IMG/VR virus record: IMGVR_UViG_3300042516_005475
Location: 62,001-126,000 of that record
Strand: one strand, 5' to 3'
DNA length: 64,000 nt
Notes under the pieces: model-generated
Told to the model about the DNA's origin: nothing
Databases searched by the model: none
Seen by the model: the letters and a program-made list of their open reading frames with translations, nothing else
Position numbers and translations under genes: made by a program
In this document: piece by piece, positions 19,410 to 64,000 of the stretch
Position numbering within the stretch: the first letter of the stretch is position 1
How the letters are laid out: the number at the start of each line of letters is the position of its first letter

Positions 19410-19410
19410 T

Positions 19411-28000: not shown

Positions 28001-28597
28001 TTTAACTATTATGTGTCAGATGTAGCAGGGGATGTAGAAAAGATTACTTTACAGGCTAATTTAGAAACATTAGCTAACCAAGATTTATTCTTTACATTTA
28101 CTTTTAATTCTCTTACTGGTGGTTCTAAGCTCTATATTAATAGTATCTTGGTTGAAGAATCTGATACTACTAATATTAAGTATTCCAAGACCCCTATCTC
28201 TGGTTCTATAGCCTTAAATTCTATTTCATTGACTGACCCAGCCTTTGAGTCTACTCAATTCAAGTGTCAAAACCTTGAGATGTACGGTATAAAGGCCTTC
28301 AACACAGTGTTATCAAAATATGATATTAGAAATCTGTTTATTAGATCAGCTAGAATTACAGATATAAACTGGAACGTTCCAGCAGGCAAGAGAAACATAA
28401 CTGAAACCATTCAGCAGAACTTTAAGTTTAGTTTACCAGGTTATAAGACCAACTTGTTTGATATTATTGTTTCAGGAGCTCAAGGATTAAACGATGTACA
28501 AAGAGAAGCAATTGCTGAAAAAATAAGAGAGTACATAAAGGGTAACATTCCGATAAATACTATTATTAACGAGGTTAACATCAGAAGTAATGAATAA
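25061..28597 (+). CDS. Large virion structural protein (beta-rich; LamG-like segment near C-terminus)
   Basis: 1178 aa, TAATG-coupled; FFTFTFNSLTGGSKLYINSILV resembles LamG/ConA strands. Confidence 0.55.
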   Translation: MNVLNLSALIPMEVEYSLDGNVNLTNNITNYFYGLNLYSTELFNFARDLSINYYNTFILTDKLDKPDFLTLSEPITASYPKTISTTVQCVGLSSTGLGFWEDYAANYSSTSPYLSCGEGIFSTGSIWNLGSWNMYDIEFLNANQCYISKLRNNNSVLTQLQTKEYLGPAFTEDVNYLTFSSTPYTFNYIYNEQNNTIVFYFNYAPNGSSSNSLFLITQEENRVVLKSVDEYVISDLGLYNLSAVFCLSYRDANTRLAEFTTNYNAYKRTYFPTAETSLCDSYDGLKNNYLVSSNVVFTDNKFLVNFQPLKNQLDLNYNFTATNSFIGQPFDNRDYQSIVSGTDQELGFPNLTLTFYTYNAPITFKKGALTYFHFPVSATPFDKLNVNDSTLVDCGSFAGQNPLDADKVFKKLLPTVAGNNIDKNQTGTYLCTWLYISAFDSRPIWMDRYYNPNFTSLQTAYTQNFNSDFVNTVTTLSAKNFTYFDKVSDLTFEPNSTYSYYRLSEADIARINNNLYENQINSDVINVYDANLNLQQAGAASFEYGFNTGSLVQKTSASGDYSICFNIKSKDFKKKFGNTLLNNFYNLNGLNITNYDNLNNLILFTSGSEIVVSNTNFDSLRNVKVLLEKSIFKTPDALLSIDFNNNVEGFYVTSISTLSSNVGINLNVGPNTSDFYLSKLDKNFTTLNTILLTSFSGGTYNFVSSNIDDTYYYALFNTFNTQVAATNQNYFLIKYPLSGMLLSQPINTPVNLQLPRYGSVNGNSITISDFTLCRSTYNFILSAGLPVYYLTDYANNSICSDVNNRAWYIYNNILYHSVTDLGNLDGFNLSYLKDSNNNQTITNVTTDNSGNIYLISDNGTDSYLYKLDNNRKPIYFQSLSSSFGAPTTKYLDILYVNNNGVIEPRPYVIYDPYQPSSLSARSFKEVNVFDASGNLIYIKPLEYETDTFNISNQNRKGFRRTLSNVEQVNNLFEVDGNPIKFNYYVSDVAGDVEKITLQANLETLANQDLFFTFTFNSLTGGSKLYINSILVEESDTTNIKYSKTPISGSIALNSISLTDPAFESTQFKCQNLEMYGIKAFNTVLSKYDIRNLFIRSARITDINWNVPAGKRNITETIQQNFKFSLPGYKTNLFDIIVSGAQGLNDVQREAIAEKIREYIKGNIPINTIINEVNIRSNE

Positions 28598-32318: not shown

Positions 32319-32380
32319 TGAAAAAAATTGTTTGTAAATAGTTCAGCTATATTTTTAGCCCACTTTAATAAATAATAATA

Positions 32381-35300: not shown

Positions 35301-38300
35301 GAGTAGGTACTGAAAGATCGCAACTTGCTGCTGCAAGCTATGGTTTTGATAAGGCTATTTTTGGTTATGGTGGTGGTCCATCCAACGCCTACAATAATGT
35401 TTCTACTTTAGTAAACAATTTAGGTGTAGTAGTTACTGATCAATTAGGTGTTGGTACTGGCAGAAAAGGTCTAGCAGCAGCTGGTTATGGTTACGATAAG
35501 GCGATTTTTGCTTTTGGGCGAACCTCTTCTGGAAATGTAAATATTTCAAATCTTGTGACTAATTTTGGTGTTATTGGCACAGATAATGCAAGTGTAGCCA
35601 CTTCTAAAGAAAACTTAGCAGCAGCTGTTTATGGTTACGATAAAGCAATTTTTGCATATGGTAGTAATTCAGGTGTTACAAATACAACCAACATTGTTTC
35701 AAATCTAGGAGTAATTTCTACAGATACAGCAGGAGTAGGAACAGCAAGATCAAGTCTCGCAGCAACAGGTTATGGCATGGATAAGGCAATATTTGGTTTT
35801 GGCTCTACAACTATTAATGTAAATATTACCTCGTTATTTTCAAATACAGGCTCTTATGTTAGTGAGAGTTCTGGTGTCGGTACTGCTAGAATTTATCTAG
35901 CAGCCACAGGTTACAATCAAGATAAAGCAATATTTGGTTTTGGTTTCGCTGGATTCTTTGCCTCCATGACAAATCTTGTTTCTAATATTGGCAATATTGC
36001 TGCTGATAATAGTACAGTAGGTACTGGAAGGTATGGGTTAGCTGCTGCAAGATTTGGTGGTATACTTCCAACTCCAACAGCTACTCCAACAGTTACTCCA
36101 ACAGTTACTCCAACTACCGGGCTATCTTCTACTCCAACTAATACAATTACACCAACTAATACAGTAACACCTACAATAACACCTACAATAACACCTACAG
36201 TAACACCTACCAATACAGTTACACCTACAATCACTCCAACGATTACTCCTACTCCAGCACCAATACAAAATTATAGTGGTATTTTTGGTTTCGGTACAAG
36301 TACTTCTGGAGGGAATACATCAATTACTAATTTATTAGTATCTAACATTGGTATTCTTGAAAATGATGTAACTACTGTTGCTACTGCCAGAAGTGAATTA
36401 GCAGCAGCAACTTACGGTACAGATAAAGCCATATTTGCTTTTGGGTATATTAACTCTGTCGGTGTTCAAAATATATCTAATTTAGTAACTAATGAGGGAG
36501 TTGTTGGAACCGATCAATCAACAGTAGGTACTTCTAGAAACCGTCTTGCAGCAGCTGGTTATGGTATAGATAAAGCTATTTTTGGTTACGGTTATAATGG
36601 AGGCTATTTGTCATTGACAAATATAGTTACTAATACCGGTGTTGTTGGTAGTGATCAAGGGGGGATTGGTACTGCTAGAGCTGATCTAGCAGCTGCTACT
36701 TTTGATAGAGATAGGGCAATTTTCGGTTTTGGAACTAATAACACTAATTTGTCAATGACAAATATAGTTACTAATACCGGTGTTGTTGGTAATGATGTAT
36801 CAAGTATTGGTACTGCTAGAAGAGGTCTAGCAGCTGCTACTTATGATGTAAATAAAGTTATATTTGGTTTCGGTAGTGTAGGAATTAGTGCTCCTGTATC
36901 AATAACCAATTTGGTTTCTAATACTGGTATTGTTGCTTCTGATACCTCTAATGTTCAAACAGCTAGAAGCGGTCTTGCTGCAGTAAGTATTGGTACTGAT
37001 AGAGCTATGTTTGGTTTTGGCTTTAGTAATACTGCTACAAATATTACAAATCTAATTAGTAATTTAGGAACAATTGTTACAGAAAATTTTGGTACTGGCA
37101 CTACAAGATACAGTCTAGCAGCTGCGAGCTTTGTTTATGTAGCCCCTACACCTTCCCCAACAATTACTCCAACAATTACTCCAACAATTACTCCAACAAA
37201 TACAGTAACACCAACTAATACACCTACCAATACAGTAACACCTACAGTTACACCTACCAATACAGTTACACCAACGAATACACCACCAAATACACCACCA
37301 CCTCAATCAGATAAGAGCGCAATATTTGGATATGGTACCAATGGTAGTTTTGGAAATAACTTATCAATGACCAATTTAGTATCTAACGCTGGTGTTGTTA
37401 CTATAGATCAAACCGGGGTTGGAACTGCAAGATATGGTTTAGCTGCTGCAAGCTATGGTGGAGACAAGGCAATATTTGGATATGGTTATGTTTCAGCTGG
37501 GTCTGGAGTACAGAATATAACCAACAAAGTTTCAAATCTTGGTATAGTTGCTAATGATGATGCTGGTGTCGGTACTCAAAGATTCTATTTAGCTGCAGCT
37601 ACCTATGGTACTGATAAAGCAATATTTGGATATGGTCAAAATAGTTCATTTGTTGGAGTTACAATAACCAATTTAGTGAATAACATTGGTAATGTTGCTT
37701 CAGACGTAACTAGTGCTGGTACTGCAAGAAGCGCATTAACATCTGCTAGCTACGGTTACGATAAGGCAATATTTGCTTTAGGTAACGGAAGTGTAATTAA
37801 TAAGATTTCAAACACTGGTATTGTTGCTTCAGATTCAAGTGGTACACCTCCAACAGCTCGAAATGGTGCTTTCGGTGCTGGGTATGGTTATGATACAGCT
37901 ATACTTGGTTTTGGTTATGATGGAACACATTTAAATACTATAACACTAATTAACAACCAAGGAGACGTTGTCACTAATACTACTGGAGGTGGTTCTTCTA
38001 GAGCTTTTGGTGCTTCAGCAAGCTATAGTACTGATAAGGCAATATTTGGTTATGGTAGTACTACTAGTTCTGCTTCGTCTGTAATAACTCTTATTTCAAA
38101 CACAGGTACAGTCGCATCAGAATCATCCGGAGTTGGTACAGCAAGAAGCAGTCTAGCTGGAGCAAGCTATGTTTCTGGTATTGCTCCGTCACCTACAGCT
38201 ACAACAACAATTACACCAACAGTAACACCTACCAATACAGTTACACCAACCAACACAGTAACACCAACTAACACACCAACTAACACAGTTACTCCAACAG

Positions 38301-41300
38301 TTACAGTTACACCAACCAATACAGTTACACCAACAAACACAGTTACACCAACTAACACAGTTACACCAACAATTACCCCAACTAATACAGTTACAGTTAC
38401 ACCTACTAACACAGTAACACCTACTAACACAGTAACACCAACACCTACGAGTACACCAGGTGCTTCTGTAACACCAACAGCTACTCCATTTGCTTTAACA
38501 AATAAAAATGCAATATTTGGTTTTGGACAAAATAATAGTGGCTCTCCCGTTTCTATGACTAACATAGTAGCTACTAATGGTAATGTGGCTTCAGATGTAA
38601 CTAGTGTTAATACAGCAAGAAGTGGTTTGGCTGCAGCTAGCTATGGTGGAGATAAGGCAATATTCGGATATGGTTATTCTAATACATTTGTTTCTATTAC
38701 TAACTTAGTTTCCGGTGCTGGTGTTGTTGCTTCAGATGTATCTAGTGCTGGTACTGCTAGATGGGCCTTAGCTGCAGCAAGTTTTGGTACTGATCAAGCG
38801 ATATTTGGTTACGGTTATAATGGTGCAGGTATTTCTATAACTAATAAAGTTTCTAACACTGGTATTGTTTCTTCTAATAATAGTACAGTTGGCTCAGCAA
38901 GAGGTAGATTAGCGGCAGCAGGTTATGGTTATGATAAAGCAATATTCGGTTATGGTTATATTTTTGAAAGCTTTGCATATGTTTCTATCTCTAATTTAGT
39001 ATCTAATACAGGTAATGTTGCTGCAGATGTTACAAATGCCGGTTCAAGACAATACCTAGCTGCGGCTGGATATGGTGGAGATAAAGCTATTTTTGGTTTT
39101 GGTGACTTTGGTAGTTATACAAATATTACAAACAAGGTTTCAAACACCGGTATTGTTGCAGCTAATACAAATGTTACTGGTACAGCTAGAAATGGTCTAG
39201 CAGCTGCTAGCTATAGTACAAATTTAGCAATATTTGGTTATGGTTATACCGGTTCAGCGTTATCAATGACCAATAAAATAAATTCAGATGGGGATGTAGC
39301 TTCTGATATAACTGGGGTTGGTACAGCTAGATATTATTTAGCTGCAGCAAGTTTTGGTCCTGAAATAATACCAACCCCAACAACTACTGCTTCAAACACA
39401 CCGACTAATACAGTGACCCCTACAGTTACACCAACTAACACAGTAACTCCAACTAACACAGTAACTCCAACCAATACTGTTACCCCTACAAATACAGTTA
39501 CACCAACTAACACTGTAACTCCAACTAACACTGTTACTCCTACAAATACAGTTACTCCAACAATTACACCAACTAATACAGTTACACCAACTAATACAGT
39601 TACTCCAACCATTACAGTTACACCAACAAACACACCAACTAACTCTGTTACACCAACAGTTACAGTTACTCCAACAATTACACCAACAATTACACCTACA
39701 CAAGATAATACATATTGCTTCCAAACTCCAGTACAAACTGTATATTTAAATAACTTTGATATTTGTCAAAATTATATAAAAGACCAACTTTTTGCCTCAA
39801 ATCTTCAATCAAGAGGGGCTTCTGATCTTCGAAAAATTCTCCTTTATATTACTCAAGTACTACCAACTACAAGCAACATATTAAATAATTCTAACTGGGG
39901 AGACTTTGGTACTACTAACGCTGCTTATAGTGTAATTTACACTTTTAATGGAATAGTTGGCGGTAAAAATCAATATTATGTATCAATAGAATGGTCATAT
40001 TCTGGTAATGTTGAACCCTATCAAATAGCTTATATTAGCTATCTATCATATAATAATAATACTGGTCAATGCGCGATTGATATGTGCTTGTTGAATGTTA
40101 TTCAATATTTTAATGTAACACCAACCCCAACAGTTACACCAACAGTTACAGTAACTCCAACCAATACAGTAACACCAACAAATACAGTTACACCAACAGT
40201 TACACCAACCACTACAGTAACCCCAACAAATACTGTTACCCCTACTGTTACCCCTACTGTTACAACGACAACTGGTTTATCTCCTACAATTACCCCTACA
40301 ATTACTCCAACAAACACTGTAACTCCAACAATTACACCAACCAATACAGTAACACCAACAATCACACCAACCAGCACAGTTACTCCTACAAATACTGTTA
40401 CTCCTACAAATACTGTTACACCTACAAATACTGTAACTCCAACCAATACAGTAACACCAACAGCTACTGTAACTCCAACTATCACTGTTACACCAACTAA
40501 TACAGTAACTCCACCCAATACTGTTACTCCAACCATTACAGTTACACCAACAATCACACCAACTAACTCTGTTACACCAACAATCACACCAACCAATACA
40601 ATCACACCAACAATTACACCCACACAAGATAACACATATTGTTTTCAGACTCTTAGAGTCCCAGTATATTTAAACAGCTTTGCAAGTTGTCAGGGTTATA
40701 TTTCTGGCTTAATTAGTTCTTCTAACATTGGTTCAAGAGGAGCAACAGATATTGTTAAGATTCTACGATACATTGTTAATAACTATAACCCTAGTGTTAA
40801 TATTTTAAATAATACAGACTGGGGAATTTATGGAACAACTGGTGGTGCTTATAGTGTACTTTATACTTATAATGGAATAGTATCTGGTAACAATGAATAT
40901 TATGTTTCTATTGAGTACACAACAGGGACACAGCAAATTCAAGTTGCTTATATCAGCTGGATGACTACAAATCTATCCCCTGGTTCTTGTATATTTGACA
41001 TGTGTTTAATTAATATTCTAACTTTTACTAATATTGATCCAACACCTACCCCAACTCCATCAGTAACTCCAACCAATACAGTAACTCCAACAAATACAGT
41101 TACACCAACCAACACAGTAACTCCAACTAATACAGTTACACCAACCAACACAGTAACACCAACAATTACACCAACTAATACAGTTACACCAACAGTTACA
41201 CCAACTAATACAGTTACACCAACCAACACAGTAACGCCAACAATTACACCAACTAATACAGTTACACCAACTAATACAGTTACACCAACAGTTACACCAA

Positions 41301-42982
41301 CTAATACAGTTACACCAACCAACACAGTAACGCCAACAATTACACCAACCACCACAGTAACGCCAACAATTACACCAACTAATACAGTTACACCAACAAT
41401 CACTCCCACAATTACACCTACACAAAAGAATACATATTGCTTCCAGTCTCCGGATACTGAACCATACATTAATAATTTTGCCGATAGTAAGAATTATATA
41501 ATTAATGCTATTGATTCTTCTAATATTGCTTCAAGAGGCGCAACTGATATAGCTAAGATTCTTAAGTTTGTTGTAAGCAGACTATATTTAGTTGGAAATA
41601 TATTTAATAATTATAGTTGGGGAGCATATGGTACAACTTCAGCAGCCTATAACGTAGTTTTCACTAATTTCGGTCCAGAGGGTAGCAATCAGAAATATTA
41701 CTTTGAAATTCAGCCAAGTTATGTAACACCAACTCAATATATTGCATATTGTTCATATTTGTTCTTCAATATGAATACTGGTACAATGTTAGTTGATATG
41801 TGTTTACTTAATATTTTTGATTATAGTAACTTCCCAGCAACACCAACACCTACAATTACTGTTACTCCAACTCAATCGTTAACACCAACTAATACAGTTA
41901 CACCAACTAATACAGTTACACCAACTATAACTCCAACCAAAACAGTTACCCCTACACCAAATAGTACCTTAACTACTCCAACTACCCCAACTTTAACTCC
42001 AACCAAGACAGTTACACCAACAGTTACAGTAACACCAACAGTAACTGTAACACCAACAGTAACTGTAACACCAACAGTAACCCCAACAGCCTCTCCTGTT
42101 TTAACAAATAAACAAGCTATTTTTGGTTATGGTCAAGGGGATAGCGGTATACTTTCAAAATCTAACACAGTTACAAATCTTGGTGTAGTTAATATAGATC
42201 AAACCGGGGTTGGAACTGCAAGATATGGTTTAGCTGCTGCAAGTTACGGTGGAGATAAGGCAATATTTGGATATGGCGCAAGTGATATTAAGCTTTCTAT
42301 AACCAATACTGTTACAAATCTTGGTATAGTTAATGCTGATCAAGCAGGAGTTGGTACAGCAAGACTTTATTTAGCTGCTGCAAGTTATGGTGGAGATAAG
42401 GCAATATTTGGCTTTGGCTTCGATGGAGGTTATACAAGTACAACCAACACTGTTACAAATCTTGGTATTGTTAATTCAGATACAAGTAGCGTAGCCACAT
42501 CAAGAGCTAATTTAGCTGCTGCAAGTTATGGTGGAGATAAAGTAATATTTGGTTTTGGAGCAACATACTCAGCGGGTAATGTTTTCTATAATAAAACCTC
42601 ACTATTTTCTAATACAGGTGTGTATGTTAGTGAAACTGACAATATTGTAACTGAAAGAGGTTTCCTCGCTGCAGCTGGTTACGGAACAGATAAAGCAATA
42701 TTTGCTTATGGTTTTAATAATAGCGGGTTCCTTTTATTAACTAATAAAGTTACAAATACAGGCACTCTTGGTTCAGATACTACTGTTGCCGGTACTGCTA
42801 GATACGCTTTAGCAGCAGCTGGTTATGGTGGAGATAAGGCGATATTTGGGTTTGGTTTCTCAAGCGACTATAGTGTTGTTAATACTACTACCTTATTTGA
42901 CAATCAAGGTAATTTTGTTAGTGAAAATTCTGGGGTTGGTACTGCAAGATACGATCTTGCAGCAGCAAGCTTTGGTAGCTAA
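32381..42982 (+). CDS. Giant (3533 aa) mucin-like multidomain protein: six Kelch-like 6-bladed propellers, three YCFQ domains, nine Thr/Pro linkers
   Basis: Continuous ORF. 36 copies of a ~47-aa unit AIFG(F/Y)G...TN.VSNTG.V..D...VGTAR..LAAA.YG.DK, in groups of six separated by TPTNTV arrays. Confidence 0.8.
32951..33890 (+). repeat. Degenerate coding tandem repeat (18-nt TPTNTV and 12-nt TPTI/TPTV units), longest of the Thr/Pro arrays
   Basis: Recurring ACACCAACYAAYACAGTW units. Similar arrays at about 18621-18980, 20420-20800, 31170-31920, 34787-35182, 36068-36260, 37144-37300, 38185-38487, 39371-39700, 40118-40625, 41039-41422 and 41840-42095. Confidence 0.95.
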
Positions 42983-46664: not shown

Positions 46665-46739
46665 GGGAGGTTAGCTCAGCGGCAGAGCAGATCCTTTACA
46701 CGGATAAGGCCAGAGGTTCAAATCCTCTACTTCCCACCA
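46665..46739 (+). tRNA. tRNA-Val(TAC)
   Basis: Acceptor GGGAGGT/ACTTCCC, anticodon loop TT-TAC-AC, T-arm AGAGG-TTCAAAT-CCTCT, encoded CCA. Confidence 0.93.
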
Positions 46740-46744: not shown

Positions 46745-46818
46745 CGGTCACAAGTGTTACGGTAGCATACATGCTTTGGGAGCATGCGGAGACAGTTCAA
46801 TTCTGTCGTGGCCGACCA
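46745..46818 (+). tRNA. tRNA-Pro(TGG), atypical core (A8/U14)
   Basis: Acceptor CGGTCAC/GTGGCCG, anticodon stem CATGC/GCATG with TT-TGG-GA loop, T-arm GACAG-TTCAATT-CTGTC, G72/A73, CCA. Confidence 0.9.
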
Positions 46819-49251: not shown

Positions 49252-49327
49252 GCGGTATTCGTATAGTGGCTTATTATGCGAGCTTGCCAAGCTTGAGACG
49301 AGGGTTCGATTCCCTCATACCGCACCA
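49252..49327 (+). tRNA. tRNA-Gly(GCC)
   Basis: Acceptor GCGGTAT/ATACCGC, anticodon loop TT-GCC-AA, T-arm GAGGG-TTCGATT-CCCTC, CCA. Confidence 0.93.
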
Positions 49328-53920: not shown

Positions 53921-54425
53921 TAGTTTCAGTTGTAGTTAAACCGCAAGAGGGTAACGTGTAAATGTTACCCTCATTTTTTTGTAGATATAGTTCGTAATCA
54001 TCTAACAAATCAGGGTAATAAAATTTAAAGTTGCTATTATAGTTAGCTCCAAACAACTTATAGTTGTTTTTATACTCATAATAAACAATTTCACTTCTAG
54101 TCAAGGCATCTTGAAACAACACTGAAGGGTCTTTAGTTAGCACTGTTTTAACATCTATATACAAAAACTGCTGAGGTTTAGTGAGGAACCCAGCTAAAAA
54201 GCTGTGCTCTAGACTTTCATGTAAGTGAATATTTGACTTAAGTCTTAGCATTTTAAAGGTTCTATGCACTTCTTTATCGTTAAAAATAAAGTTTAGACGC
54301 TCGTTAAACCCCAATCTTTTGGATCGGTAATAAAAAGGTATAGCATGCTCTAATTCGTTGTTATCTACTAGTGTAAAAACAAACATATGTAATAAGTAAT
54401 TACCATTAAACCTGTTGGTTTTCAA
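53910..54425 (-). CDS. Hypothetical protein, possibly a degenerate nucleotide-sugar transferase-like fold
   Basis: FLYIDVKTVLTKDPSVLF resembles the hhhDxD...DP..LF segment of GT-A enzymes but lacks the second Asp; start uncertain. Confidence 0.4.
   Translation of the reverse strand: MKTNRFNGNYLLHMFVFTLVDNNELEHAIPFYYRSKRLGFNERLNFIFNDKEVHRTFKMLRLKSNIHLHESLEHSFLAGFLTKPQQFLYIDVKTVLTKDPSVLFQDALTRSEIVYYEYKNNYKLFGANYNSNFKFYYPDLLDDYELYLQKNEGNIYTLPSCGLTTTETIKS
53947..53980 (+). terminator. Rho-independent terminator of nrdJ, embedded in the antisense CDS
   Basis: GAGGGTAACGT-GTAA-ATGTTACCCTC then ATTTTTTT, 26 nt after the nrdJ stop. Confidence 0.8.
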
Positions 54426-54442: not shown

Positions 54443-57400
54443 ATGGCAGACATACAAGTAATACCAGGAGTAGCGGTAATATCTTTCTCAGGAGTAGCTA
54501 CAAACACTGTATATCTTTCTTCAAGCGACGCTGGTGTAGCAATCTTAGAAGGACCAAGCGGGTCAATGTTTACAGCAGATGGTAATACTAACGAGATGAC
54601 TATACATTCTACGTTATCTGCTTCAAACTTTGTAATTAATACCCCAGATATAGATGCATCTGGACTTGATACTCTAGTAGACCCACTCTCAGTCTTAGCA
54701 CTTTCAGCTGGTAAATTTTATGTTACAACTGCCGGTAAAATAGGAGCCCCTGGAGAATCTGGAGCTAGTGGTTTACCTGGCTCTCCTGGTATCTCCGGTA
54801 TTCCTGGTATCTCCGGTATTCCTGGTATTAGCGGAACTCCTGGTTTCAGCGGACTGCCTGGAGCTAGCGGACTACCAGGAGCCAGTGGCTTGCCTGGAGC
54901 AAGCGGTCTTCCTGGAGCAAGTGGGTTACCAGGAGCAAGTGGTGTACCAGGCATTAGCGGTATTCCGGGTATCTCTGGTACTCCTGGTATTAGTGGAACG
55001 CCCGGTATCTCTGGTATTCCAGGCGCAAGTGGGCTGCCTGGCGCAAGTGGTCTTCCTGGAGCAAGTGGGTTACCAGGAGCAAGCGGTCTCCTTGGCACTA
55101 GCGGCATACCAGGCATCTCTGGTACACCAGGCATAAGTGGTGTACCGGGTATTAGTGGCATACCAGGCATCTCTGGTACACCAGGCATCTCTGGTACACC
55201 AGGAGCAAGCGGTCTACCTGGTATTCAAGGTATATCTGGGGCTCCTGGTATTTCAGGTATTCCTGGTATTAGTGGTCTTCCAGGAATATCAGGAATACCC
55301 GGAATTAGTGGTACTCCAGGAACTTCAGGCAATCCTGGCGCTAGTGGATTACCAGGTGTTCAAGGCCCATCAGGAACCTCAGGAGAAAGTGGGTTGCCTG
55401 GAACAAGTGGGTTGAGCGGCAAGCCTGGAGATAGTGGTTTGCCAGGCATTAGTGGCTCTCCAGGGGATAGTGGTTTGCAAGGCATTAGCGGCTCTCCAGG
55501 CATTAGCGGCTTACCTGGTACAGTAGGTACTCAGGGTATTAGCGGTTTACCTGGATTTAGCGGCATCCCTGGTATTAGTGGTACTCCAGGAGCAAGTGGT
55601 TTGCCAGGGACTAACGGAATTCCTGGAGATAGTGGTTTTCCAGGTATTAGCGGTGTTCCAGGTATTAGCGGTCTTCCTGGAGCAAGAGGTTTTCCAGGAG
55701 ATTCTGGTGTTCCTGGAATTAGTGGAACACCAGGAGACTCTGGAACCCCTGGAATAAGCGGTCTACCAGGTGCTAGCGGTCTACCAGGTGCTAGCGGTGG
55801 TCTTGGTATTAGTGGTACTCCTGGTATCAGCGGGGTTCCTGGGGTCTCCGGTGCTCCAGGTATTAGCGGCCCTCCTGGGGTCTCTGGTCTTCCTGGAGCA
55901 AGTGGTTTGCCAGGTATTAGTGGTACTACAGGAGAATCTGGAGTACCAGGTATCAGCGGCACTCCTGGTGACTCTGGTCTTCCTGGAGCAAGTGGTTTGC
56001 TAGGTGTCTCTGGTCTTCCTGGAGAATCTGGAGTACCAGGTATCAGCGGCACTCCTGGGGTCTACGGTACTCCAGGTATTAGCGGGGTTCCTGGTGTCTC
56101 CGGTACTCCAGGTATTAGCGGGGTTCCTGGTGTCTCCGGTACTCCAGGTATTAGCGGGGTTCCTGGTGTCTCTGGTCTTCCTGGAGCAAGCGGACAGTCA
56201 GGGGATAGTGGTACTACAGGAGCAAGCGGGTTGTCTGGTATTAGTGGTACTCCTGGTGTCTCCGGTACTCCAGGTATTAGCGGTGTTCCTGGTATTAGTG
56301 GTTTACCAGGAGCAAGTGGTTTACCAGGAGCAAGAGGTATTGCTGGTGGTGCAACGTATTACTTAAACAACTCAGTTACATCTTTATCTGGTTGGAAAGA
56401 GTGGAGTACAACTCCAGTACTTTTAGCACAGACAGTTGATACAATAACTTTAAGTGCCAGTGAAACAGGTGTTATTCAAAGTTTCATTACTCCAGAGAAC
56501 GACCCTTATTTAACATTCATTACACCTGGTATTTGGGCATTTTATTTGCACTGTGTAAGAGGTGGTAACAATACAATTTTTGATGTATATGCTCAAGTTT
56601 ACCGATACAACACTAATTTAGGCACCTTAACCTATTTATTATCAACTGCTCCTGTTGCTGTTGTTTCAAACACTACACCACAGATGCAACTTTCAGACTC
56701 GTTCTTTAATGGGGCATCTGCATTATTAAATGATCGATTGTATGTTGAAATTAAAGCTGTAAATAATGGTAATAATACTAATACAGTTTCTCTTTATTCA
56801 GAGGGAGAGACAAATTATTCCTTCAGTATTACTCCAATTGGTGCAACAGGTAACAGCGGTCTTCCTGGTATAAGCGGAACTCCTGGTATTAGTGGGTTAC
56901 CTGGCGCTAGCGGTTTGTCTGGCTACAGTGGTCTGCCAGGTATTAGCGGTTTACCTGGCCACAGTGGTCTGCCAGGTATTAGCGGTTTACCTGGCCACAG
57001 TGGTCTGCCTGGCTTTAGTGGTCTGCCAGGCGATAGCGGTCTGCCTGGTGTTAGCGGTGGTCCTGGTGTTAGCGGTGGTCCTGGTGTTAGCGGTGGTCCT
57101 GGTATTAGTGGAGCACCAGGTATCAGCGGAGCTTTAGGTGGTAGTGGTTTGCCAGGTGTTAGTGGTTTGCCAGGTATGGTTGGATTGTCAGGCGATAGCG
57201 GTCTGCCTGGTTACAGTGGGTTACCTGGTATTAGTGGTGGTCCTGGTATTAGTGGTACTCCTGGAATTAGCGGTCCTCCTGGTGTCTCCGGTGCTCCAGG
57301 TATTAGCGGTCCTCCTGGAGTCTCTGGTCTTCCTGGAGCAAGTGGTTTGCCAGGTAAAGATGGTGGTCAATTAACTGTAAGCAATTATGTAGCAAGCGGG

Positions 57401-58564
57401 AAGTTGAATTCTTCTACTCAAACAATAACAGCTGGAGCTGATACAGTAGTCCAATTTGTTGATTATTTTGACCCACAAAACTGGTGGAATGCCTCTACAT
57501 ATCAATTCAAACCAACCGTTGAAGGTTATTATGAAATAACTTTTGCTGTATGGTGGGGCGCAGCAGATGTTACTACAACTAACCAAACTAATATTCAAAT
57601 ACGTAAGAATGGTACAACCCAAATGGGTATTAGCCAACATTCATTACAAGCTGGTATTGGTATTTCTCAAATCTTAACAAAGATAATCTTTCTCAATGGT
57701 GGTGCTGACTATTTAGATTTTACCGTTTTTACTGCAGATACTGGAACACAAGACATCCAACAAGGCAATACTGAAGGAAGCGGTACATATTTTTCTGCAG
57801 CATTAATTGTTGGTGGAACATCATCTGGTTTACCTGGTGCATCTGGTTTACCTGGTGAATCTGGTTTACCTGGTGCTGTAGGTTTACCTGGTCATAGCGG
57901 TTTACCTGGTGTTTCTGGTGTTTCTGGTTTTTCTGGTTTACCTGGTGCTGTAGGTTTACCTGGCCATAGCGGTTTACCTGGTGTTTCTGGTTTACCTGGC
58001 TTCTCAGGTCAGCCTGGTCATAGCGGTTTACCCGGTCATAGCGGTTTACCTGGAGCATCTGGTTTACCTGGTACATCTGGTTTACCAGGCTTCTCAGGTC
58101 AGCCTGGTGCTGGAGTATCAGGTGGAACCACTAACACAATTGCGAAATTTAGCAGCTCTACAACAGTTGCAAATTCTTCAATGACTGATGATGGTACAAC
58201 AGTTACAATATCTGCAGTAAGTAATATAAGAGGTGTTAAGGAAACTTTCAATAATGTTTCCCCTTCAGCTGGGGTTGTTACTATAGATCTTAACACAACA
58301 ACCGTTGCGCGTCTTACTCTTAATGCTAGCGTCACTAGCTTTACTATTAGTAATCTAACTGCAGGTAGGGCAAATTCATTTACAATAATAACAATACCTA
58401 ATGGTTCTGTATTCACAATAACCTGGTCCTTTGGTGGGGTTTCTGTTAAGTGGCCAGGAGGTACAGCACCAACTCTAACAACAACAAATACTAAATTTGA
58501 TATTTTTAGCTTTATATATGACGGTACAAACTGGTATGGTTTTAACGGAGGTCAAAATTTTTAA
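54443..58564 (+). CDS. Collagen-like fibre protein: three Gly-X-Y tracts, internal C1q-like domain, phage fibre C-terminal module
   Basis: Gly-X-Y at about 54743-56345, 56840-57365 and 57827-58125. C1q-like VVQF...WNASTYQFKPTVEGYYEI...KNG...LNGGADYL...TYFSAALI. C-terminal VKWPGGTAPTLT...DIFSFIYDGTNWYG. Confidence 0.9.
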   Translation: MADIQVIPGVAVISFSGVATNTVYLSSSDAGVAILEGPSGSMFTADGNTNEMTIHSTLSASNFVINTPDIDASGLDTLVDPLSVLALSAGKFYVTTAGKIGAPGESGASGLPGSPGISGIPGISGIPGISGTPGFSGLPGASGLPGASGLPGASGLPGASGLPGASGVPGISGIPGISGTPGISGTPGISGIPGASGLPGASGLPGASGLPGASGLLGTSGIPGISGTPGISGVPGISGIPGISGTPGISGTPGASGLPGIQGISGAPGISGIPGISGLPGISGIPGISGTPGTSGNPGASGLPGVQGPSGTSGESGLPGTSGLSGKPGDSGLPGISGSPGDSGLQGISGSPGISGLPGTVGTQGISGLPGFSGIPGISGTPGASGLPGTNGIPGDSGFPGISGVPGISGLPGARGFPGDSGVPGISGTPGDSGTPGISGLPGASGLPGASGGLGISGTPGISGVPGVSGAPGISGPPGVSGLPGASGLPGISGTTGESGVPGISGTPGDSGLPGASGLLGVSGLPGESGVPGISGTPGVYGTPGISGVPGVSGTPGISGVPGVSGTPGISGVPGVSGLPGASGQSGDSGTTGASGLSGISGTPGVSGTPGISGVPGISGLPGASGLPGARGIAGGATYYLNNSVTSLSGWKEWSTTPVLLAQTVDTITLSASETGVIQSFITPENDPYLTFITPGIWAFYLHCVRGGNNTIFDVYAQVYRYNTNLGTLTYLLSTAPVAVVSNTTPQMQLSDSFFNGASALLNDRLYVEIKAVNNGNNTNTVSLYSEGETNYSFSITPIGATGNSGLPGISGTPGISGLPGASGLSGYSGLPGISGLPGHSGLPGISGLPGHSGLPGFSGLPGDSGLPGVSGGPGVSGGPGVSGGPGISGAPGISGALGGSGLPGVSGLPGMVGLSGDSGLPGYSGLPGISGGPGISGTPGISGPPGVSGAPGISGPPGVSGLPGASGLPGKDGGQLTVSNYVASGKLNSSTQTITAGADTVVQFVDYFDPQNWWNASTYQFKPTVEGYYEITFAVWWGAADVTTTNQTNIQIRKNGTTQMGISQHSLQAGIGISQILTKIIFLNGGADYLDFTVFTADTGTQDIQQGNTEGSGTYFSAALIVGGTSSGLPGASGLPGESGLPGAVGLPGHSGLPGVSGVSGFSGLPGAVGLPGHSGLPGVSGLPGFSGQPGHSGLPGHSGLPGASGLPGTSGLPGFSGQPGAGVSGGTTNTIAKFSSSTTVANSSMTDDGTTVTISAVSNIRGVKETFNNVSPSAGVVTIDLNTTTVARLTLNASVTSFTISNLTAGRANSFTIITIPNGSVFTITWSFGGVSVKWPGGTAPTLTTTNTKFDIFSFIYDGTNWYGFNGGQNF

Positions 58565-58569
58565 TTTTT

Positions 58570-59385
58570 ATGGCTACTATAGGTTCTGGTCGCGGACCAT
58601 TAATAAGAAGTAAAGGTGGCGGTGGTTTTACACCAGTAGAAGTTTTAGTACTAAGTGTAGGTTCTGGTTCAAGTACCGTTCCATCTGGAGCCACAAGCGC
58701 AGTTGTAGAAGCTTGGGGTGGAGGAGGAGGAAGCACTGGAGGTGATATAAGTACTGGAACTGGTGCGGGAGGAGCTTATGCAAGATCTACTATTACAGGA
58801 ATAAGTGGTGGGAATATTTTTTATTATACTGTTGGAGCTGGAGGAGTTGGTACTGGTTCATCAAGTGCAACAGCAGGTGGTGATAGTTGGGTAAATTATA
58901 ATTCTAACTCTGTACCTACGTCTTCAACTACTGGCTGTAAAGCGGTTGGTGGAGCAACACATCCAACTACAATACCAAATAATTCAACTCAATTAGCTAA
59001 TTCTATTGGCACAATAAGATATATTGGCGGATCAGGAGGTGGTGGTCCAGAAGGTGGTGGAGGAGGATCAGCAGGAACAACTGCAAATGGAGTCAATGGA
59101 ACTGGTGGAAGCGGTGCAGCGGGAGGCGCTTCTGGAAGCGGTGCAGCGGGAGGGTGTGGAGGTGGAGGTTCCAATTCAGGTGGAAATGGACAAAGTACTG
59201 TCAACGGAGGAGGTGGAGGGGGTGGTTCATATAATAATGCAGGAGGTAATGGTGGAGTTCCTGGAGGAGCTGGTGGTATGGGATGGTCAAGTCAAAATGC
59301 AGTTTGTGCAGGAGGTACAAATACAAATACCGCAGGAACTGGTGGTGATGGTGGAAGAGGTCAAGTCAGAATAACTTATAATTAA
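58570..59385 (+). CDS. Glycine-rich tail-fibre tip / receptor-binding-type protein
   Basis: TVPSGATSAVVEAWGGGGG...YTVGAGG...GDSW...GDGGRGQVRITY is the phage Gly-rich domain pattern. Confidence 0.75.
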   Translation: MATIGSGRGPLIRSKGGGGFTPVEVLVLSVGSGSSTVPSGATSAVVEAWGGGGGSTGGDISTGTGAGGAYARSTITGISGGNIFYYTVGAGGVGTGSSSATAGGDSWVNYNSNSVPTSSTTGCKAVGGATHPTTIPNNSTQLANSIGTIRYIGGSGGGGPEGGGGGSAGTTANGVNGTGGSGAAGGASGSGAAGGCGGGGSNSGGNGQSTVNGGGGGGGSYNNAGGNGGVPGGAGGMGWSSQNAVCAGGTNTNTAGTGGDGGRGQVRITYN

Positions 59386-59389
59386 AATT

Positions 59390-59851
59390 ATGAAAGTAGC
59401 AACAATAATCGACAATAATATTACAATACAAAATATTTATGAAATGTATCCTCATGTATCTTTTCCAGATACTGGTGTACCAGATTCATTTTTACAAGAA
59501 AATAACTTGTATAGAGTTATTGACACATTACCATACAATCCAGAAACGCAAATTTTTAATTTGTTGGATAAACCAGTGTTAGTAGATAATTTAGTTTATA
59601 CTGTTGTAGTGTTTGCAAAAACAGAAGAAGAAATTAAATCAGACAAGCTTTTAAAAGTCAGACAGTATCGTAATGATCTTTTAAATGCATCTGATAATTA
59701 CGTAACTATTGATAGGTGGGAAACATATTCAGAAGATAAAAAATTTGCTTGGAGACAGTATAGACAAGCCTTAAGGGATTTACCTCAATACACAGAAGAT
59801 CTGGATAATATCCTATGGCCAGTAAGTCCCGCTGCTCCACCAGCGCGCTAA
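59390..59851 (+). CDS. Tail fibre assembly chaperone
   Basis: VRQYRNDLLNASD...AWRQYRQALRDLPQ...ILWPVSP. Confidence 0.85.
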   Translation: MKVATIIDNNITIQNIYEMYPHVSFPDTGVPDSFLQENNLYRVIDTLPYNPETQIFNLLDKPVLVDNLVYTVVVFAKTEEEIKSDKLLKVRQYRNDLLNASDNYVTIDRWETYSEDKKFAWRQYRQALRDLPQYTEDLDNILWPVSPAAPPAR

Positions 59852-59892
59852 ATGTTAATTGATTTCAATCGAAAATAATATACATATTTTGT

Positions 59893-60675
59893 ATGACGGT
59901 ATTACATCAGGATATTGGAAAGGTAATCCAGCCTAAAATTAATCCAAATCTCATTATTCAGGAACTAGCTAGTACATTTAAATCTACTGGCAGATTAGAA
60001 ATTCCTGAATTTTTAGATGCTGCTACTGCTGATCATATGCATTATTTTTATAATGAACTGTATCCTTCAGAATGGTGGTCTTCCTCAAGTGTGCCAGCCA
60101 TATTTAAAAATTATGTAACTAACACTGAGATCTATGATGAGTATAATCAAGGAGATCGTTTTCAAAACACTCCTGATAATCAGGCTGCAATTAAAATTAC
60201 ATACGAGGCAGCTCATAAGGCTAATGGGGAGGGTAAATTTGCATATTTCTTCTATAGATCTTTTAATGATCACCCAGTAGATTGTGTTTGTCAAGAATGT
60301 CAGCTAACTAGATTCTTTAGCGCTCCTGAGTTTATAGTGTTTTTAAATGCTATTACTGGTAATACACTGAATATTGTTGCTCCCTTTACAATTTTTACTA
60401 GCAAATACTCTCAAGGCTGCTTCCTTAATACCCATTCTGATGATATGAATGGTAAACTAGCCTTTGTCTATCATCTTACTAAGGATTGGAGACCTGACTA
60501 CGGTGGCTTATTTACAGCTCAAGATAAGGATAGAAACGTGCTAAAAACCATTGTTCCTAGCTTTAACAAGTTTGTTTGCTTTAGAGTTGGAGATTATGTT
60601 ACTCCTCATAGTGTCACTCAGGTTTCTCACCACGTACAGAAGCATAGAATGTCGTTAACTGGTTGGTATAAGTGA
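59893..60675 (+). CDS. 2OG-Fe(II) oxygenase, prolyl-hydroxylase-like
   Basis: FLNTHSD (HxD), LAFVYHLTKDWRPDYGG, PSFN, PHSV (distal His), RMSLTGW (RxS). Confidence 0.85.
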   Translation: MTVLHQDIGKVIQPKINPNLIIQELASTFKSTGRLEIPEFLDAATADHMHYFYNELYPSEWWSSSSVPAIFKNYVTNTEIYDEYNQGDRFQNTPDNQAAIKITYEAAHKANGEGKFAYFFYRSFNDHPVDCVCQECQLTRFFSAPEFIVFLNAITGNTLNIVAPFTIFTSKYSQGCFLNTHSDDMNGKLAFVYHLTKDWRPDYGGLFTAQDKDRNVLKTIVPSFNKFVCFRVGDYVTPHSVTQVSHHVQKHRMSLTGWYK

Positions 60676-62826: not shown

Positions 62827-63999
62827 TTAATATTTATTGAAGCTATTAACAATTTTGTCAACTTCTGTTTGCACTGTATCAACAGATATGCTTTTCATAC
62901 AGTTTGCTCTAAACGGATTCAAATGATCTTTTATCCATTTTAAATGTTCAAAGTCTTCCTTTACTTTACCAACAATATATGTTGTAGACGGCCAAAACGC
63001 GTGATCATTATGAGCAGGAGTAACAACAATACCTTTTTTACCCATTAAGCCACACAAATGCTGAAAGAATGTATCTAAACCTAAAAAGAATCTACTAGTT
63101 ATTATTAAAGCAACTAACTCTCCAAAGCTTCTGTTAAAAAAGTATTCATTTACGTTATTAACTTTAAAATCTTCCTTAACACCTACTTGGATTATGTAAT
63201 AGCCTTTGCTTTGCAGATTAGAAACAATTTGTTCCCACCTACTAAACTCCCATGTTTTATTACTTAGCATTAACCCGTTACTTGGACCTTCTCTATTAGA
63301 AGCTGATGGAGCCAGCAATACTATCTCTTTACCAGAAAATTCGTTTCTTATTTTAGAAACATCATCTAAATTGTAAAAGTATTTCCATCTTCTATCATCA
63401 AACAGGTCTTCTTCTCCATTCATAGAGAAGTAAGCATACTCGAGTGTTTTGCTTTTATTTTCACTACCATGTTCGTAAACATTAAAACCTAACCCGTTTA
63501 ATTCCCACAAATCATATCTCATTTTTATATCACCTGATAAATCGTATAAAAATGGATAGGCTGTTCCTACAGTTAGACTATTAGTCTTTTTTAAAGATTC
63601 AAGAAGATTAAATGCACAAACGTTATCTCCAAGAGCCTCGTGAATATTAATCCATCTAGTGGAATTGTCTAATAATCTCTTTTCTTTCTTTGTTTCGAAC
63701 CTAGCTTTATCTTCTTTATGGTATTCCGGCTCACTAATTTCGTCTCCCATTCTAACTGCGAAATCGTAAATAGCCCACTCTAATGTTATATACTTAAAGT
63801 CTATACCACCAATCTTCCTAGCCTTTTTAATATCAGAAATATAAATGTATCCCTTTGTGTATTTTTTCTCAAAAGCAAATTCCTCTATGTTAAAGTCATC
63901 ATTTGTTAACAATACTTTTTTTGTTCTGCAAATGTTTATTAACTTATTCCAGTTATAAGCATTTTCATTTGTCTCATAACCTGTTTCACTGTGTCTGGT
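62827..63999 (-). CDS. GT9-family (heptosyltransferase-like) glycosyltransferase, 5' end outside the window
   Basis: Frame is open to the window edge. KTWEFSRWEQIV...IIQVG...ALIITSRFFLGLDTFFQHL...GKKGIVV...CMKSISVDTV. Confidence 0.75.
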   Translation of the reverse strand, partial: TRHSETGYETNENAYNWNKLINICRTKKVLLTNDDFNIEEFAFEKKYTKGYIYISDIKKARKIGGIDFKYITLEWAIYDFAVRMGDEISEPEYHKEDKARFETKKEKRLLDNSTRWINIHEALGDNVCAFNLLESLKKTNSLTVGTAYPFLYDLSGDIKMRYDLWELNGLGFNVYEHGSENKSKTLEYAYFSMNGEEDLFDDRRWKYFYNLDDVSKIRNEFSGKEIVLLAPSASNREGPSNGLMLSNKTWEFSRWEQIVSNLQSKGYYIIQVGVKEDFKVNNVNEYFFNRSFGELVALIITSRFFLGLDTFFQHLCGLMGKKGIVVTPAHNDHAFWPSTTYIVGKVKEDFEHLKWIKDHLNPFRANCMKSISVDTVQTEVDKIVNSFNKY

Positions 64000-64000
64000 A

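What the first reader, a model, noticed from the sequence alone, without database searches (positions are those of the whole stretch)
54443..60675. Collagen with Pro and Ser in the Y position next to a prolyl-hydroxylase-like oxygenase
Seen: the Gly-X-Y tracts mostly alternate G-x-S and G-x-P (GISGIP, GASGLP, GISGTP), so Y is nearly always Ser or Pro. The first tract runs about 178 triplets. A 2OG-Fe(II) oxygenase with HxD...H...RxS lies three genes downstream on the same strand. Established: animal collagen is stabilised by 4-hydroxylation of Y-position Pro, while typical bacterial collagens put Pro in X and lack Hyp. Glycosylated Y-position Thr stabilises some collagens, and a prolyl hydroxylase plus a GT60 form the two-step Skp1 pathway in protists. 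Inference: this phage makes an animal-style hydroxylated, possibly Ser- or Hyp-glycosylated, collagen fibre.
Basis: partly seen in the sequence, partly recalled or inferred. Interest (0 to 1): 0.78.

Follow-up and report, generated by a model that had tools for sequence, protein, structure and literature searches.

The report
Phage collagen fibre with prolyl-hydroxylase-like neighbour

Summary
ORF 54443-58564 (1373 aa) has three uninterrupted Gly-X-Y tracts of 180, 59 and 32 triplets. Y is Ser 129 and Pro 117 of 271, strictly alternating, so the unit is G-x-S-G-x-P. Pro is almost absent from X.

Three genes downstream on the same strand lies a 260-aa 2OG-Fe(II) oxygenase with H181-x-D183, H239 and R252. 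By sequence and by a confident model, its nearest characterised relatives are protein prolyl hydroxylases: OGFOD1/Tpa1/Ofd1 first, then PPHD and PHD2. Collagen-type P4Hs are not among the matches.

In relatives (45-84% identity) the oxygenase always follows a Y-Pro collagen fibre on the same strand, even where the fibre tip or chaperone cassette is swapped or absent. Twenty-five other phage collagens have at most 6% Y-Pro.

Against this, sister-clade oxygenases sit beside collagens that contain no Pro, and the wider family is often fused to glycosyltransferases and sugar-nucleotide enzymes.

The GT60 link is not supported. That gene lies about 32 kb upstream of the fibre gene. In 70 of 80 viral loci its homologues sit next to Thr/Pro-rich mucin-like proteins, never next to this oxygenase.

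Verdict: partly supported. It is a new variant of a known kind, and hydroxylation remains to be shown.

The parts
54443..58564 (+). Collagen-like tail-fibre gene, 1373 aa
   Evidence: Pfam Collagen 5.7e-123. PHROG tail-fibre families score down to 3.3e-104. Composition is tabulated.
54443..54733 (+). N-terminal non-collagen domain (aa 1-97), probably the virion-proximal attachment end
   Evidence: 91% identical to the L003 fibre, the most conserved part. The attachment role is inferred.
54734..56353 (+). Collagen tract 1: 180 uninterrupted G-X-Y triplets, G-x-S-G-x-P hexads, about 154 nm if triple-helical
   Evidence: 18-nt period and its multiples.
56354..56839 (+). Non-collagen node NC1 (aa 638-799)
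   Evidence: 84% identical to L003. No PDB sequence match. Atlas lead only: phage-specific beta-sandwich-like clusters.
56840..57370 (+). Collagen tract 2: 59 triplets
57371..57826 (+). Non-collagen node NC2 (aa 977-1128)
   Evidence: 53% identical to L003. No PDB match.
57827..58114 (+). Collagen tract 3: 32 triplets
58115..58561 (+). C-terminal fibre domain (aa 1225-1373)
   Evidence: PHROG 9017 tail fiber 2.3e-9. Atlas neighbours are phage tail-fibre C-terminal clusters, some carrying Collagen. 46% identical to L003 over 79 aligned residues.
58570..59385 (+). Glycine-rich 271-aa protein, possibly a distal tip or adhesin
   Evidence: Weak PF21722 Gly_rich_2 hit, 0.0038, below the cut-off. 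No similarity to the gene at this position in L003. The role is inferred from position.
59390..59851 (+). Tail-fibre assembly chaperone, 153 aa
   Evidence: PF16778 Phage_tail_APC 3.1e-14. PHROG tail fibre assembly families.
59893..60675 (+). Single-domain 2OG-Fe(II) oxygenase of the OGFOD1/PHD (prolyl-hydroxylase) branch, 260 aa; H181, D183, H239, R252
   Evidence: AF2 model pLDDT 93.5. Foldseek against PDB, Swiss-Prot and BFVD.

Best explanation
The region is the tail-fibre module of an uncultured, roughly 230-kb lake-water jumbo phage.

The 1373-aa protein is a trimeric collagen-like fibre. It would have about 230 nm of triple helix in three segments, separated by globular nodes. The helix is built from G-x-S-G-x-P hexads with few charged residues and about 15% imino acid.

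The last gene of the same co-directional gene string is a single-domain 2OG/Fe(II) oxygenase of the OGFOD1/PHD prolyl-hydroxylase branch. The most likely reading is that it hydroxylates Pro residues of the fibre during late-gene expression. The abundant Y-position Pro is the most probable target. Hydroxylation would raise the stability of a helix that lacks the usual bacterial stabilisers: X-Pro, Y-Thr/Gln and charge pairs.

Shown: the composition, the enzyme class, intact catalytic residues, and conserved gene linkage in relatives.

Inferred: the substrate, the regiochemistry (3- versus 4-hydroxylation) and the effect on stability.

The GT60 elsewhere in the window is not part of this system.
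For: - Composition and hexad periodicity.
- Fibre identity and a tail-fibre chaperone next door.
- Intergenic gaps are 5, 4 and 41 nt, with no convincing terminator in between.
- Oxygenase profile against the PDB: OGFOD1 3.7e-27, Tpa1 4e-19, PHD2 and PPHD about 1e-6.
- The pLDDT 93.5 model matches OGFOD1 and Ofd1 best (TM by query 0.57-0.63), then PPHD, PHD2 and Dictyostelium PhyA.
- Relatives: L003 (80%), L004 (84%), L222 (80%) and L086-L089 (45%) all have a Y-Pro collagen fibre (Y-Pro 40-61%) directly upstream on the same strand. The tip and chaperone genes are unrelated in L003 and missing in L222 and L086, where the fibre ends in an S74-type self-cleaving chaperone. In L091 (62%) only the S74-like C-terminal end of the upstream gene lies on the contig.
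- All 12 rows of one oxygenase clade have a collagen-like ORF within 10 kb, against 2 of 22 rows outside it.
- 25 other phage collagen ORFs have Y-Pro of 6% or less.
- Long G-x-S/T-G-x-P arrays in 2.9 million viral contigs occur only in this clade.
- An Ofd1-like hydroxylase was found in a cyanophage virion proteome (PMC12801897).
Against: - There is no chemical evidence.
- The nearest characterised enzymes act on ribosomal protein uS12 or EF-Tu, not collagen. Collagen-type P4Hs are absent from the profile hits at E<=1 and from the Foldseek top 50.
- In the sister subclade the nearby collagens are G-[ST]-S with zero Pro (L111, L124) or have Pro only in X, and they usually lie on the opposite strand. 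The clade-wide linkage could therefore be synteny within related phages.
- The linkage in the Y-Pro subclade may amount to one or two evolutionary events.
- The wider family is often fused to GT2, GT4, GT25, GT28, FUT8-like, methyltransferase and NDP-sugar epimerase/dehydratase domains. This points to glycan chemistry.
- Other Y-Pro-rich viral collagens were found without this oxygenase in the flanks fetched.
Confidence: 0.4

Rival explanations
1. The oxygenase belongs to a glycosylation or glycan-tailoring toolkit. It would modify a sugar, a nucleotide-sugar or a glycosylated residue, on the virion or on the host envelope. Its position after the fibre gene would reflect the usual clustering of accessory genes near fibre genes.
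For: - The same domain is fused to GT2, GT4, GT25, GT28, FUT8-like and methyltransferase domains.
- Atlas structural neighbours include viral fusions to NDP-sugar epimerase/dehydratase (206 members) and to GT2 (180 members).
- A BFVD hit is annotated 'GDP-mannose 4,6 dehydratase', 616 aa.
- A conserved GT9-like gene lies just downstream in the window, L003, L004 and L086. L086 also carries GT4-, DUF5672- and MGAT2-like genes.
- PolD, a small-molecule hydroxylase, is among the structural hits.
Against: - The best sequence and structure matches are all protein prolyl hydroxylases.
- The enzyme here is a stand-alone domain.
- Hydroxylase-plus-glycosyltransferase fusions are also what one expects for hydroxylate-then-glycosylate protein pathways, so the fusions do not exclude a protein substrate.
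Confidence: 0.2
2. The oxygenase modifies nothing in the collagen, and the fibre is functional unmodified. The linkage would be inherited gene order in one phage lineage.
For: - Sister-clade oxygenases sit by Pro-free collagens.
- Downstream HNH, lysozyme-like and GT9-like genes are syntenic across the clade, so common descent explains much of the linkage.
- Bacterial collagens fold without Hyp (PMC8968730).
- A lake phage works at low temperature, where 15% imino acid may suffice (inference).
Against: - Linkage survives replacement or loss of the genes between the fibre and the oxygenase, and a change of fibre C-terminus type.
- The catalytic residues are invariant.
- Y-Pro is found only in fibres that have the co-directional oxygenase.
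Confidence: 0.2
3. The oxygenase is a host-takeover enzyme that hydroxylates a host translation protein such as uS12 or EF-Tu, as OGFOD1/Tpa1 and PPHD do.
For: The closest characterised relatives are OGFOD1, Tpa1, Ofd1 and PPHD. One source names a homologue 'Rps23 Pro-64 3,4-dihydroxylase Tpa1-like'.
Against: - It sits at the end of a structural fibre operon, not among early genes.
- It lacks the second (Ofd1_CTDD) domain of OGFOD1/Tpa1.
- Collagen linkage across the clade is unexplained by this reading.
Confidence: 0.1

Closest known systems
OGFOD1 / Tpa1 / Ofd1 / Sudestada1 (ribosomal protein uS12 prolyl 3- or 3,4-hydroxylases)
   Same: Best sequence match (profile E 3.7e-27 and 4e-19) and best structural match (TM by query 0.57-0.63). 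Same HxD...H...R catalytic set and PF13661 membership.
   Different: Those enzymes have two double-stranded beta-helix domains in 500-650 aa and act on a ribosomal protein. This one is a single 260-aa domain with a conserved CxCxxC motif, encoded in a phage fibre operon. Identity is only 16-18%.
Mimivirus L230 with collagen L71, and chlorovirus PBCV-1 prolyl 4-hydroxylase (from my own knowledge)
   Same: These are virus-encoded 2OG oxygenases that modify, or can modify, collagen-like or Pro-rich viral substrates. The concept of a virus tailoring its own collagen is the same.
   Different: Both are viruses of eukaryotes. L230 is a lysyl hydroxylase/glucosyltransferase. PBCV-1 P4H is of the collagen/plant P4H type. 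Neither type appeared among the matches here.
Bacillus anthracis P4H and the BclA collagen-like exosporium fibre
   Same: A prokaryotic collagen-like filament with a globular C-terminal domain, post-translational modification of the collagen region (BclA glycosylation), and a bacterial P4H able to hydroxylate collagen peptides (PMC8968730).
   Different: BclA uses GXT repeats, and its in vivo hydroxylation is not established. BaP4H is of the collagen-P4H type and is not adjacent to bclA (my knowledge). Here the repeat is G-x-S-G-x-P and the enzyme gene is adjacent to the fibre module.
Ordinary phage collagen-like tail fibres (PHROGs 6320, 5073, 1806; E. coli prophage collagens)
   Same: Gly-X-Y tracts between globular domains, a tail-fibre chaperone or S74 self-chaperone, and a variable distal end.
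   Different: Typical phage and bacterial collagens put Pro in X and Thr, Gln or Ser in Y. The 25 others sampled here have Y-Pro of 6% or less (PMC8968730). Tract length is also exceptional: 180 uninterrupted triplets here and 636 triplets in total in L003.
Skp1 pathway of protists (PhyA prolyl 4-hydroxylase followed by the GT60 enzyme Gnt1)
   Same: Both enzyme classes are encoded in the window. The GT60 is a strong PF11397 member, and PhyA is a detectable structural relative of the oxygenase (6t8m, E 2.4e-7).
   Different: There is no genomic or phyletic coupling of the two genes. The oxygenase is nearer to OGFOD1 than to PhyA. The GT60 is coupled to Thr/Pro-rich proteins, which resembles the trypanosome mucin Thr-GlcNAc transferases of the same family.

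Membership tests
Collagen triple-helix repeat protein (PF01391) | Gly at every third residue over long uninterrupted runs | tested here: met
   180, 59 and 32 perfect triplets. Pfam 401 bits against a cut-off of 27.2.
Collagen triple-helix repeat protein (PF01391) | Forms a trimeric triple helix | not testable with these tools
   Needs circular dichroism, protease resistance or electron microscopy of the protein.
Phage tail fibre | Homology to tail-fibre families and a tail-fibre assembly chaperone in the operon | tested here: met
   PHROG tail fiber hits. PF16778 3.1e-14 two genes downstream. Conservation falls from proximal to distal: 91, 84, 53, 46%. The baseplate module lies upstream.
2OG-Fe(II) oxygenase, PHD/OGFOD1 branch (PF13661/PF13640) | HxD...H iron triad plus the 2OG-binding Arg on a double-stranded beta-helix | tested here: met
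   H181, D183, H239 and R252 are invariant in 60 sequences. They align to OGFOD1 H155/D157/H218/R230; those residue numbers are from my knowledge and the alignment is. Model pLDDT 93.5. Pfam 69.5 bits against 27.
OGFOD1/Tpa1/Ofd1 family proper | Two-domain architecture with a C-terminal Ofd1_CTDD domain | tested here: not met
   260 aa and a single domain, with no PF10637 hit for the window protein.
OGFOD1/Tpa1/Ofd1 family proper | Hydroxylates a conserved Pro of ribosomal protein uS12 | not testable with these tools
   Biochemical assay needed.
Collagen-type prolyl 4-hydroxylase (animal C-P4H, Cr-P4H, BaP4H, PBCV-1 P4H) | Closest sequence or structure relatives are collagen-type P4Hs | tested here: not met
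   None is recognisable among the 47 profile hits at E<=1. Only one chain, 9ei6, is named 'P4H alpha subunit domain' (2.7e-6), and P3H1 scores 0.28. None is in the Foldseek PDB top 50.
Collagen-type prolyl 4-hydroxylase (animal C-P4H, Cr-P4H, BaP4H, PBCV-1 P4H) | Hydroxylates X-Pro-Gly peptides | not testable with these tools
   Enzyme assay or mass spectrometry needed.
Skp1-type hydroxylation-glycosylation pathway | The GT60 enzyme and the prolyl hydroxylase are functionally coupled, shown by co-occurrence or co-location | tested here: not met
   None of the 78 GT60 loci outside the window's own sequence has this oxygenase within 10 kb. No contig other than the window's own appears in both lists. 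The genes are 38 kb apart here.
GT60 (PF11397) glycosyltransferase | Family profile match and a conserved metal-binding D-x-H motif | tested here: met
   246 bits against a cut-off of 21. D98-S99-H100 is invariant in 9 homologues. PHROG 24687 4.8e-159.

The most novel reading that the evidence does not exclude
A bacteriophage makes hydroxyproline collagen. A stand-alone OGFOD1-like prolyl hydroxylase, co-transcribed with the fibre, would convert the Y-position Pro of G-x-S-G-x-P hexads to Hyp. That would permit exceptionally long triple-helical tail fibres, about 230 nm here and over 500 nm in a relative. It would be the first Hyp-stabilised collagen system in a virus of bacteria, and a recruitment of the ribosomal-hydroxylase branch to collagen that is independent of animal P4H.
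Probability: 0.33. Interest if true: 0.8.

Novelty: new variant of a known kind. Interest (0 to 1): 0.6.

Why it matters
Hydroxyproline-stabilised collagen is treated as a eukaryotic trait, with giant-virus exceptions. Prokaryotic collagens are thought to manage without it. A phage fibre with animal-level Y-Pro, no X-Pro, few charges and a dedicated prolyl-hydroxylase-like gene makes that assumption directly testable. The test needs only two small genes.

If hydroxylation is confirmed, three things follow:
- Collagen hydroxylation would have arisen independently from a different hydroxylase branch.
- It would explain how very long phage fibres stay folded.
- It would provide a compact enzyme-substrate pair for making hydroxylated recombinant collagen in bacteria.

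If it is refuted, the function of a large family of phage and bacterial OGFOD1-like single-domain oxygenases is still open. That family has about 3500 representative clusters and is often fused to glycosyltransferases.

Tried and rejected
- **GT60 as the collagen glycosyltransferase: rejected.** None of the 78 GT60 loci outside the window's own sequence has this oxygenase, and only 8 of the 78 have a collagen-like ORF, all G-[ST]-S. In contrast, 70 of the 80 GT60 loci fetched have a Thr/Pro-rich ORF, usually directly upstream.
- **Cultured relatives: none found.** No cultured phage carries a close oxygenase homologue; the only hit is a 25% match in a faecal contig. RNR and ClpB-like queries gave only distant hits.
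- **Non-collagen fibre domains.** They have no solved-structure relatives by sequence and are not detectably related to one another.
- **Resemblance between the fibre C-terminus and that of L111.** I saw this by eye. BLASTP did not support it (E 1.8), so I dropped it.
- **Bacterial homologues.** Loci L005, L090 and L227-L234 show no collagen linkage. The one collagen-like ORF nearby is an 18-triplet ORF on L227, a low-GC MAG contig that may itself be phage.
- **Other Y-Pro-rich viral collagens.** L181 and L179 showed no 2OG oxygenase in the flanks fetched.
- **NCBIfam:** nothing useful.
- **Promoter and terminator scans:** at chance level.
- **The listing of cluster members:** switched off.
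- **Literature searches:** no report of a hydroxylated phage collagen or of phage GT60 substrates.
Full report
**What the window is.** The window lies on IMG/VR contig 3300042516_005475 (230,047 bp; loci L002 and L006 match at 100%). It has about 33-37% G+C outside the repeat genes. It carries a gp25-like and a gp6-like baseplate gene, a tail-fibre assembly chaperone, a class II-like ribonucleotide reductase and three tRNA genes. The same DNA occurs in at least 19 lake-water metagenome runs from 2020 and 2024. It is therefore an uncultured freshwater jumbo phage with a contractile-tail baseplate. No cultured phage is close.

**The observation.** ORF 54443-58564 encodes 1373 aa with three uninterrupted Gly-X-Y tracts: aa 98-637 (180 triplets), 800-976 (59) and 1129-1224 (32). 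Over 271 triplets, Y is Ser 129 and Pro 117. X is Leu, Ile, Ala, Thr or Val, with Pro only 4 times.
- The two Y residues alternate. 213 of 268 neighbouring pairs are S/P, against 111 +/- 7.5 after shuffling. The real unit is a G-x-S-G-x-P hexad, seen at DNA level as an 18-nt period and its multiples.
- Ser is encoded by both AGY (87) and TCN (45) codons. The residue is therefore under selection, not just a copied DNA repeat.
- Tracts contain 14.9% imino acid and only 26 charged residues in 813.
- Published figures for bacterial collagens are 19-31% Pro in X and 32-48% Thr in Y. Human collagens have 34-42% Pro/Hyp in Y (PMC8968730). This protein therefore has an animal-like Y position and an X position unlike either group.
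- At 0.286 nm per residue the three tracts would span about 154, 51 and 27 nm (inference).

**The protein is a fibre.** It matches many PHROG tail-fibre and collagen-like minor tail families. It is followed at 5 nt by a Gly-rich 271-aa protein and at 4 nt by a PF16778 tail-fibre assembly chaperone. Against the homologue in L003, identity falls from the N-terminus (91%) through NC1 (84%) and NC2 (53%) to the C-terminal domain (46%). This is the usual pattern of a conserved virion-proximal end and a variable receptor end. A near-identical contig (L001) differs by a 12-residue, two-hexad insertion. L003 has 636 triplets in a 2462-aa protein.

**The oxygenase.** ORF 59893-60675 starts 41 nt after the chaperone gene and is the last gene before the strand switches.
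- It hits PF13661 and PF13640 above threshold.
- H181, D183, H239 and R252 are invariant across 60 homologues.
- A profile of the family finds OGFOD1 (3.7e-27) and Tpa1 (4e-19) far ahead of PolD (9blq), PHD2, PPHD and a 'P4H alpha domain' chain (about 1e-6 to 1e-8). P3H1 scores 0.28.
- An AlphaFold2 model with pLDDT 93.5 matches OGFOD1, Tpa1 and Ofd1 best (TM by query 0.57-0.63). PPHD, a Burkholderia oxygenase, PolD, PHD2 and Dictyostelium PhyA follow.
- The best viral match is a giant-virus 'TPA1/OFD1 N-terminal domain' protein (TM 0.77).
- Collagen-type P4Hs do not appear.

The enzyme is thus a member of the prolyl-hydroxylase branch. It lacks the second domain of OGFOD1/Tpa1 and is not a collagen P4H homologue in the narrow sense.

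- Close relatives keep the arrangement. In L003 (80% identical oxygenase) and L004 (84%), a Y-Pro collagen fibre is followed by two or three genes and then the oxygenase. The genes in between are unrelated to those of the window.
- In L221-L224 (80%), a G-I-S-G-T-P collagen ends in an S74-type self-cleaving chaperone domain, and the oxygenase follows 29 nt later.
- In L086-L089 (45%) the same is true, with Y being Pro 45, Val 19 and Ser 18 of 113.
- In L091 (62%) the upstream gene ends with an S74-like C-terminus at the contig edge.
- The many contigs that break just upstream of the oxygenase fit an assembly-breaking repeat there.
- In a tree of 34 family members, one clade (support 90/87) holds every phage oxygenase with a collagen-like ORF within 10 kb: 12 of 12 rows, against 2 of 22 outside.
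- Y-Pro is peculiar to the fibres of the co-directional subclade. 25 other distinct phage collagen ORFs, fetched for unrelated reasons, have Y-Pro of 6% or less, with a median of 0.
- A scan of 2.9 million viral contigs for four consecutive G-x-[S/T]-G-x-P hexads found 73 stretches. Only this phage and its relatives had more than four matches.

**What weakens the hydroxylated-collagen reading.**
- In the sister subclade the nearby collagens are G-[ST]-S with no Pro at all (L111, L124) or have Pro in X only. They usually lie on the other strand. Collagen proline cannot be the family-wide substrate, and part of the linkage may be inherited gene order.
- HNH, lysozyme-like and GT9-like genes downstream are also syntenic.
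- Across about 3500 representative clusters, the domain is repeatedly fused to GT2, GT4, GT25, GT28 and FUT8-like glycosyltransferases and to methyltransferases. In viruses it is also fused to NDP-sugar epimerase/dehydratase domains. This fits either hydroxylate-then-glycosylate protein pathways or glycan tailoring.
- Bacterial homologues show no collagen context.
- One metatranscriptome contig covers 218 nt of the gene, which does not prove transcription.

**The GT60.** ORF 21184-22473 is a strong PF11397 member with a conserved D-S-H motif. Its end lies 32 kb upstream of the fibre gene. None of the 78 viral loci carrying a homologue, beyond the window's own sequence, has this oxygenase within 10 kb. 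No contig other than the window's own appears in both the GT60 and the oxygenase lists.
- The genes flanking it carry long (T-P-T-N-T-V)n tracts. These are 17097-19409, 19411-21150 (ending 33 nt before the GT60), 28590-32318 and the 3533-aa ORF 32381-42982.
- 70 of 80 GT60 loci have such a Thr/Pro-rich ORF within 10 kb, usually directly upstream on the same strand. None of the 64 oxygenase loci does.
- GT60 enzymes are known to add GlcNAc to Thr of trypanosome mucins or to Hyp of Skp1 (my knowledge). The parsimonious substrate here is the mucin-like linkers, not the collagen. The Skp1-like two-step pathway is therefore not supported.

**Conclusion.** The anatomy is real and unusual. The substrate is inferred, and the analogy to animal P4H is functional, not homologous. 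I put hydroxylation of fibre proline at about 0.4 (about 0.33 for the full 'Hyp-stabilised phage collagen' reading). A glycan-related role and 'no modification of the collagen' are each at about 0.2, and a host translation target is at about 0.1. No paper in the searchable library describes a phage collagen paired with a prolyl hydroxylase. Mass spectrometry after co-expression of two small genes would settle it.

Noticed in passing
window 17097-21150, 21184-22473, 28590-42982: The GT60 gene is embedded among structural ORFs that carry long mucin-like (T-P-T-N-T-V)n tracts. In 70 of 80 viral loci with a GT60 homologue, a Thr/Pro-rich ORF lies within 10 kb, usually directly upstream. This suggests phage-encoded mucin-type O-GlcNAc glycosylation of virion linkers. 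GT60 homologues are very common, with at least 7396 clusters. They occur in the cultured jumbo phages XacN1, Xoo-sp13, CM1 and RAS14.
   Followed up: partly
window 32381-42982 (+): A 3533-aa ORF with 22.6% Thr and at least six TPTNTV-type tracts has no Pfam hit. It accounts for the strongly negative GC skew at 30-34 kb and 40-42 kb. XacN1 has a comparably large ORF near its GT60 region.
   Followed up: no
window 46665-46739, 46745-46818, 49252-49327: The window holds tRNA-Val(TAC), tRNA-Pro(TGG) and tRNA-Gly(GCC) genes. These amino acids dominate the repeat proteins. In the collagen, 206 of 280 Gly codons are GGT or GGC and 44 Pro codons are CCA.
   Followed up: no
window 58570-59851 versus L003 7786-9989: The genes between the fibre and the oxygenase are unrelated in the two phages, although the flanking genes are 80-91% identical. 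Here they are a Gly-rich protein and a chaperone. In L003 they encode proteins of 325, 218 and 185 aa. This looks like a swapped tip or host-range cassette.
   Followed up: partly
window 62827-64000 (-), running off the window end: The 361-aa ORF listed by the ORF listing is the C-terminal part of a roughly 568-aa gene. It is 80% identical to L003 12927-14633 and 36% to a gene in L086 that carries a weak GT9 (heptosyltransferase) hit. This glycosyltransferase-like gene is conserved near the fibre-oxygenase module.
   Followed up: partly
L001 versus window 54443-58564: A contig with an identical oxygenase has a fibre 12 residues (two hexads) longer, 275 against 271 triplets. Tract length is therefore polymorphic in whole hexads.
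   Followed up: yes
L139 6965-10705: In an unrelated phage, a collagen fibre with Pro in X and an S74 chaperone end is followed by two 2OG oxygenases. One is PiuC-like (PF13640, 197 aa) and one belongs to this family. A TPR/methyltransferase-like gene comes next.
   Followed up: partly
L181 7657-12966 and L179 (contig 3300031951_000034): Three tandem collagen-like genes have both X-Pro (about 0.45) and Y-Pro (about 0.4), which is 'GPP-like'. No 2OG oxygenase was found in the flanks fetched, but a GT4 gene is nearby.
   Followed up: partly
window 22470-24146 (+): A 558-aa ORF overlaps the GT60 stop. It has an HtrL/YibB-like N-terminal domain and a weak PHROG hit to a glucosyl-HMC glucosyltransferase. 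It may be a second glycosyltransferase of the same module.
   Followed up: no
window 53947-53972 (+): A strong terminator-like hairpin (11 pairs followed by a T run) sits just after the ribonucleotide reductase gene and before the fibre gene. The fibre operon therefore probably starts a new transcription unit.
   Followed up: no
window 59906-60123: A 218-nt contig from a freshwater metatranscriptome library matches the oxygenase gene with one mismatch. DNA carry-over cannot be excluded.
   Followed up: no
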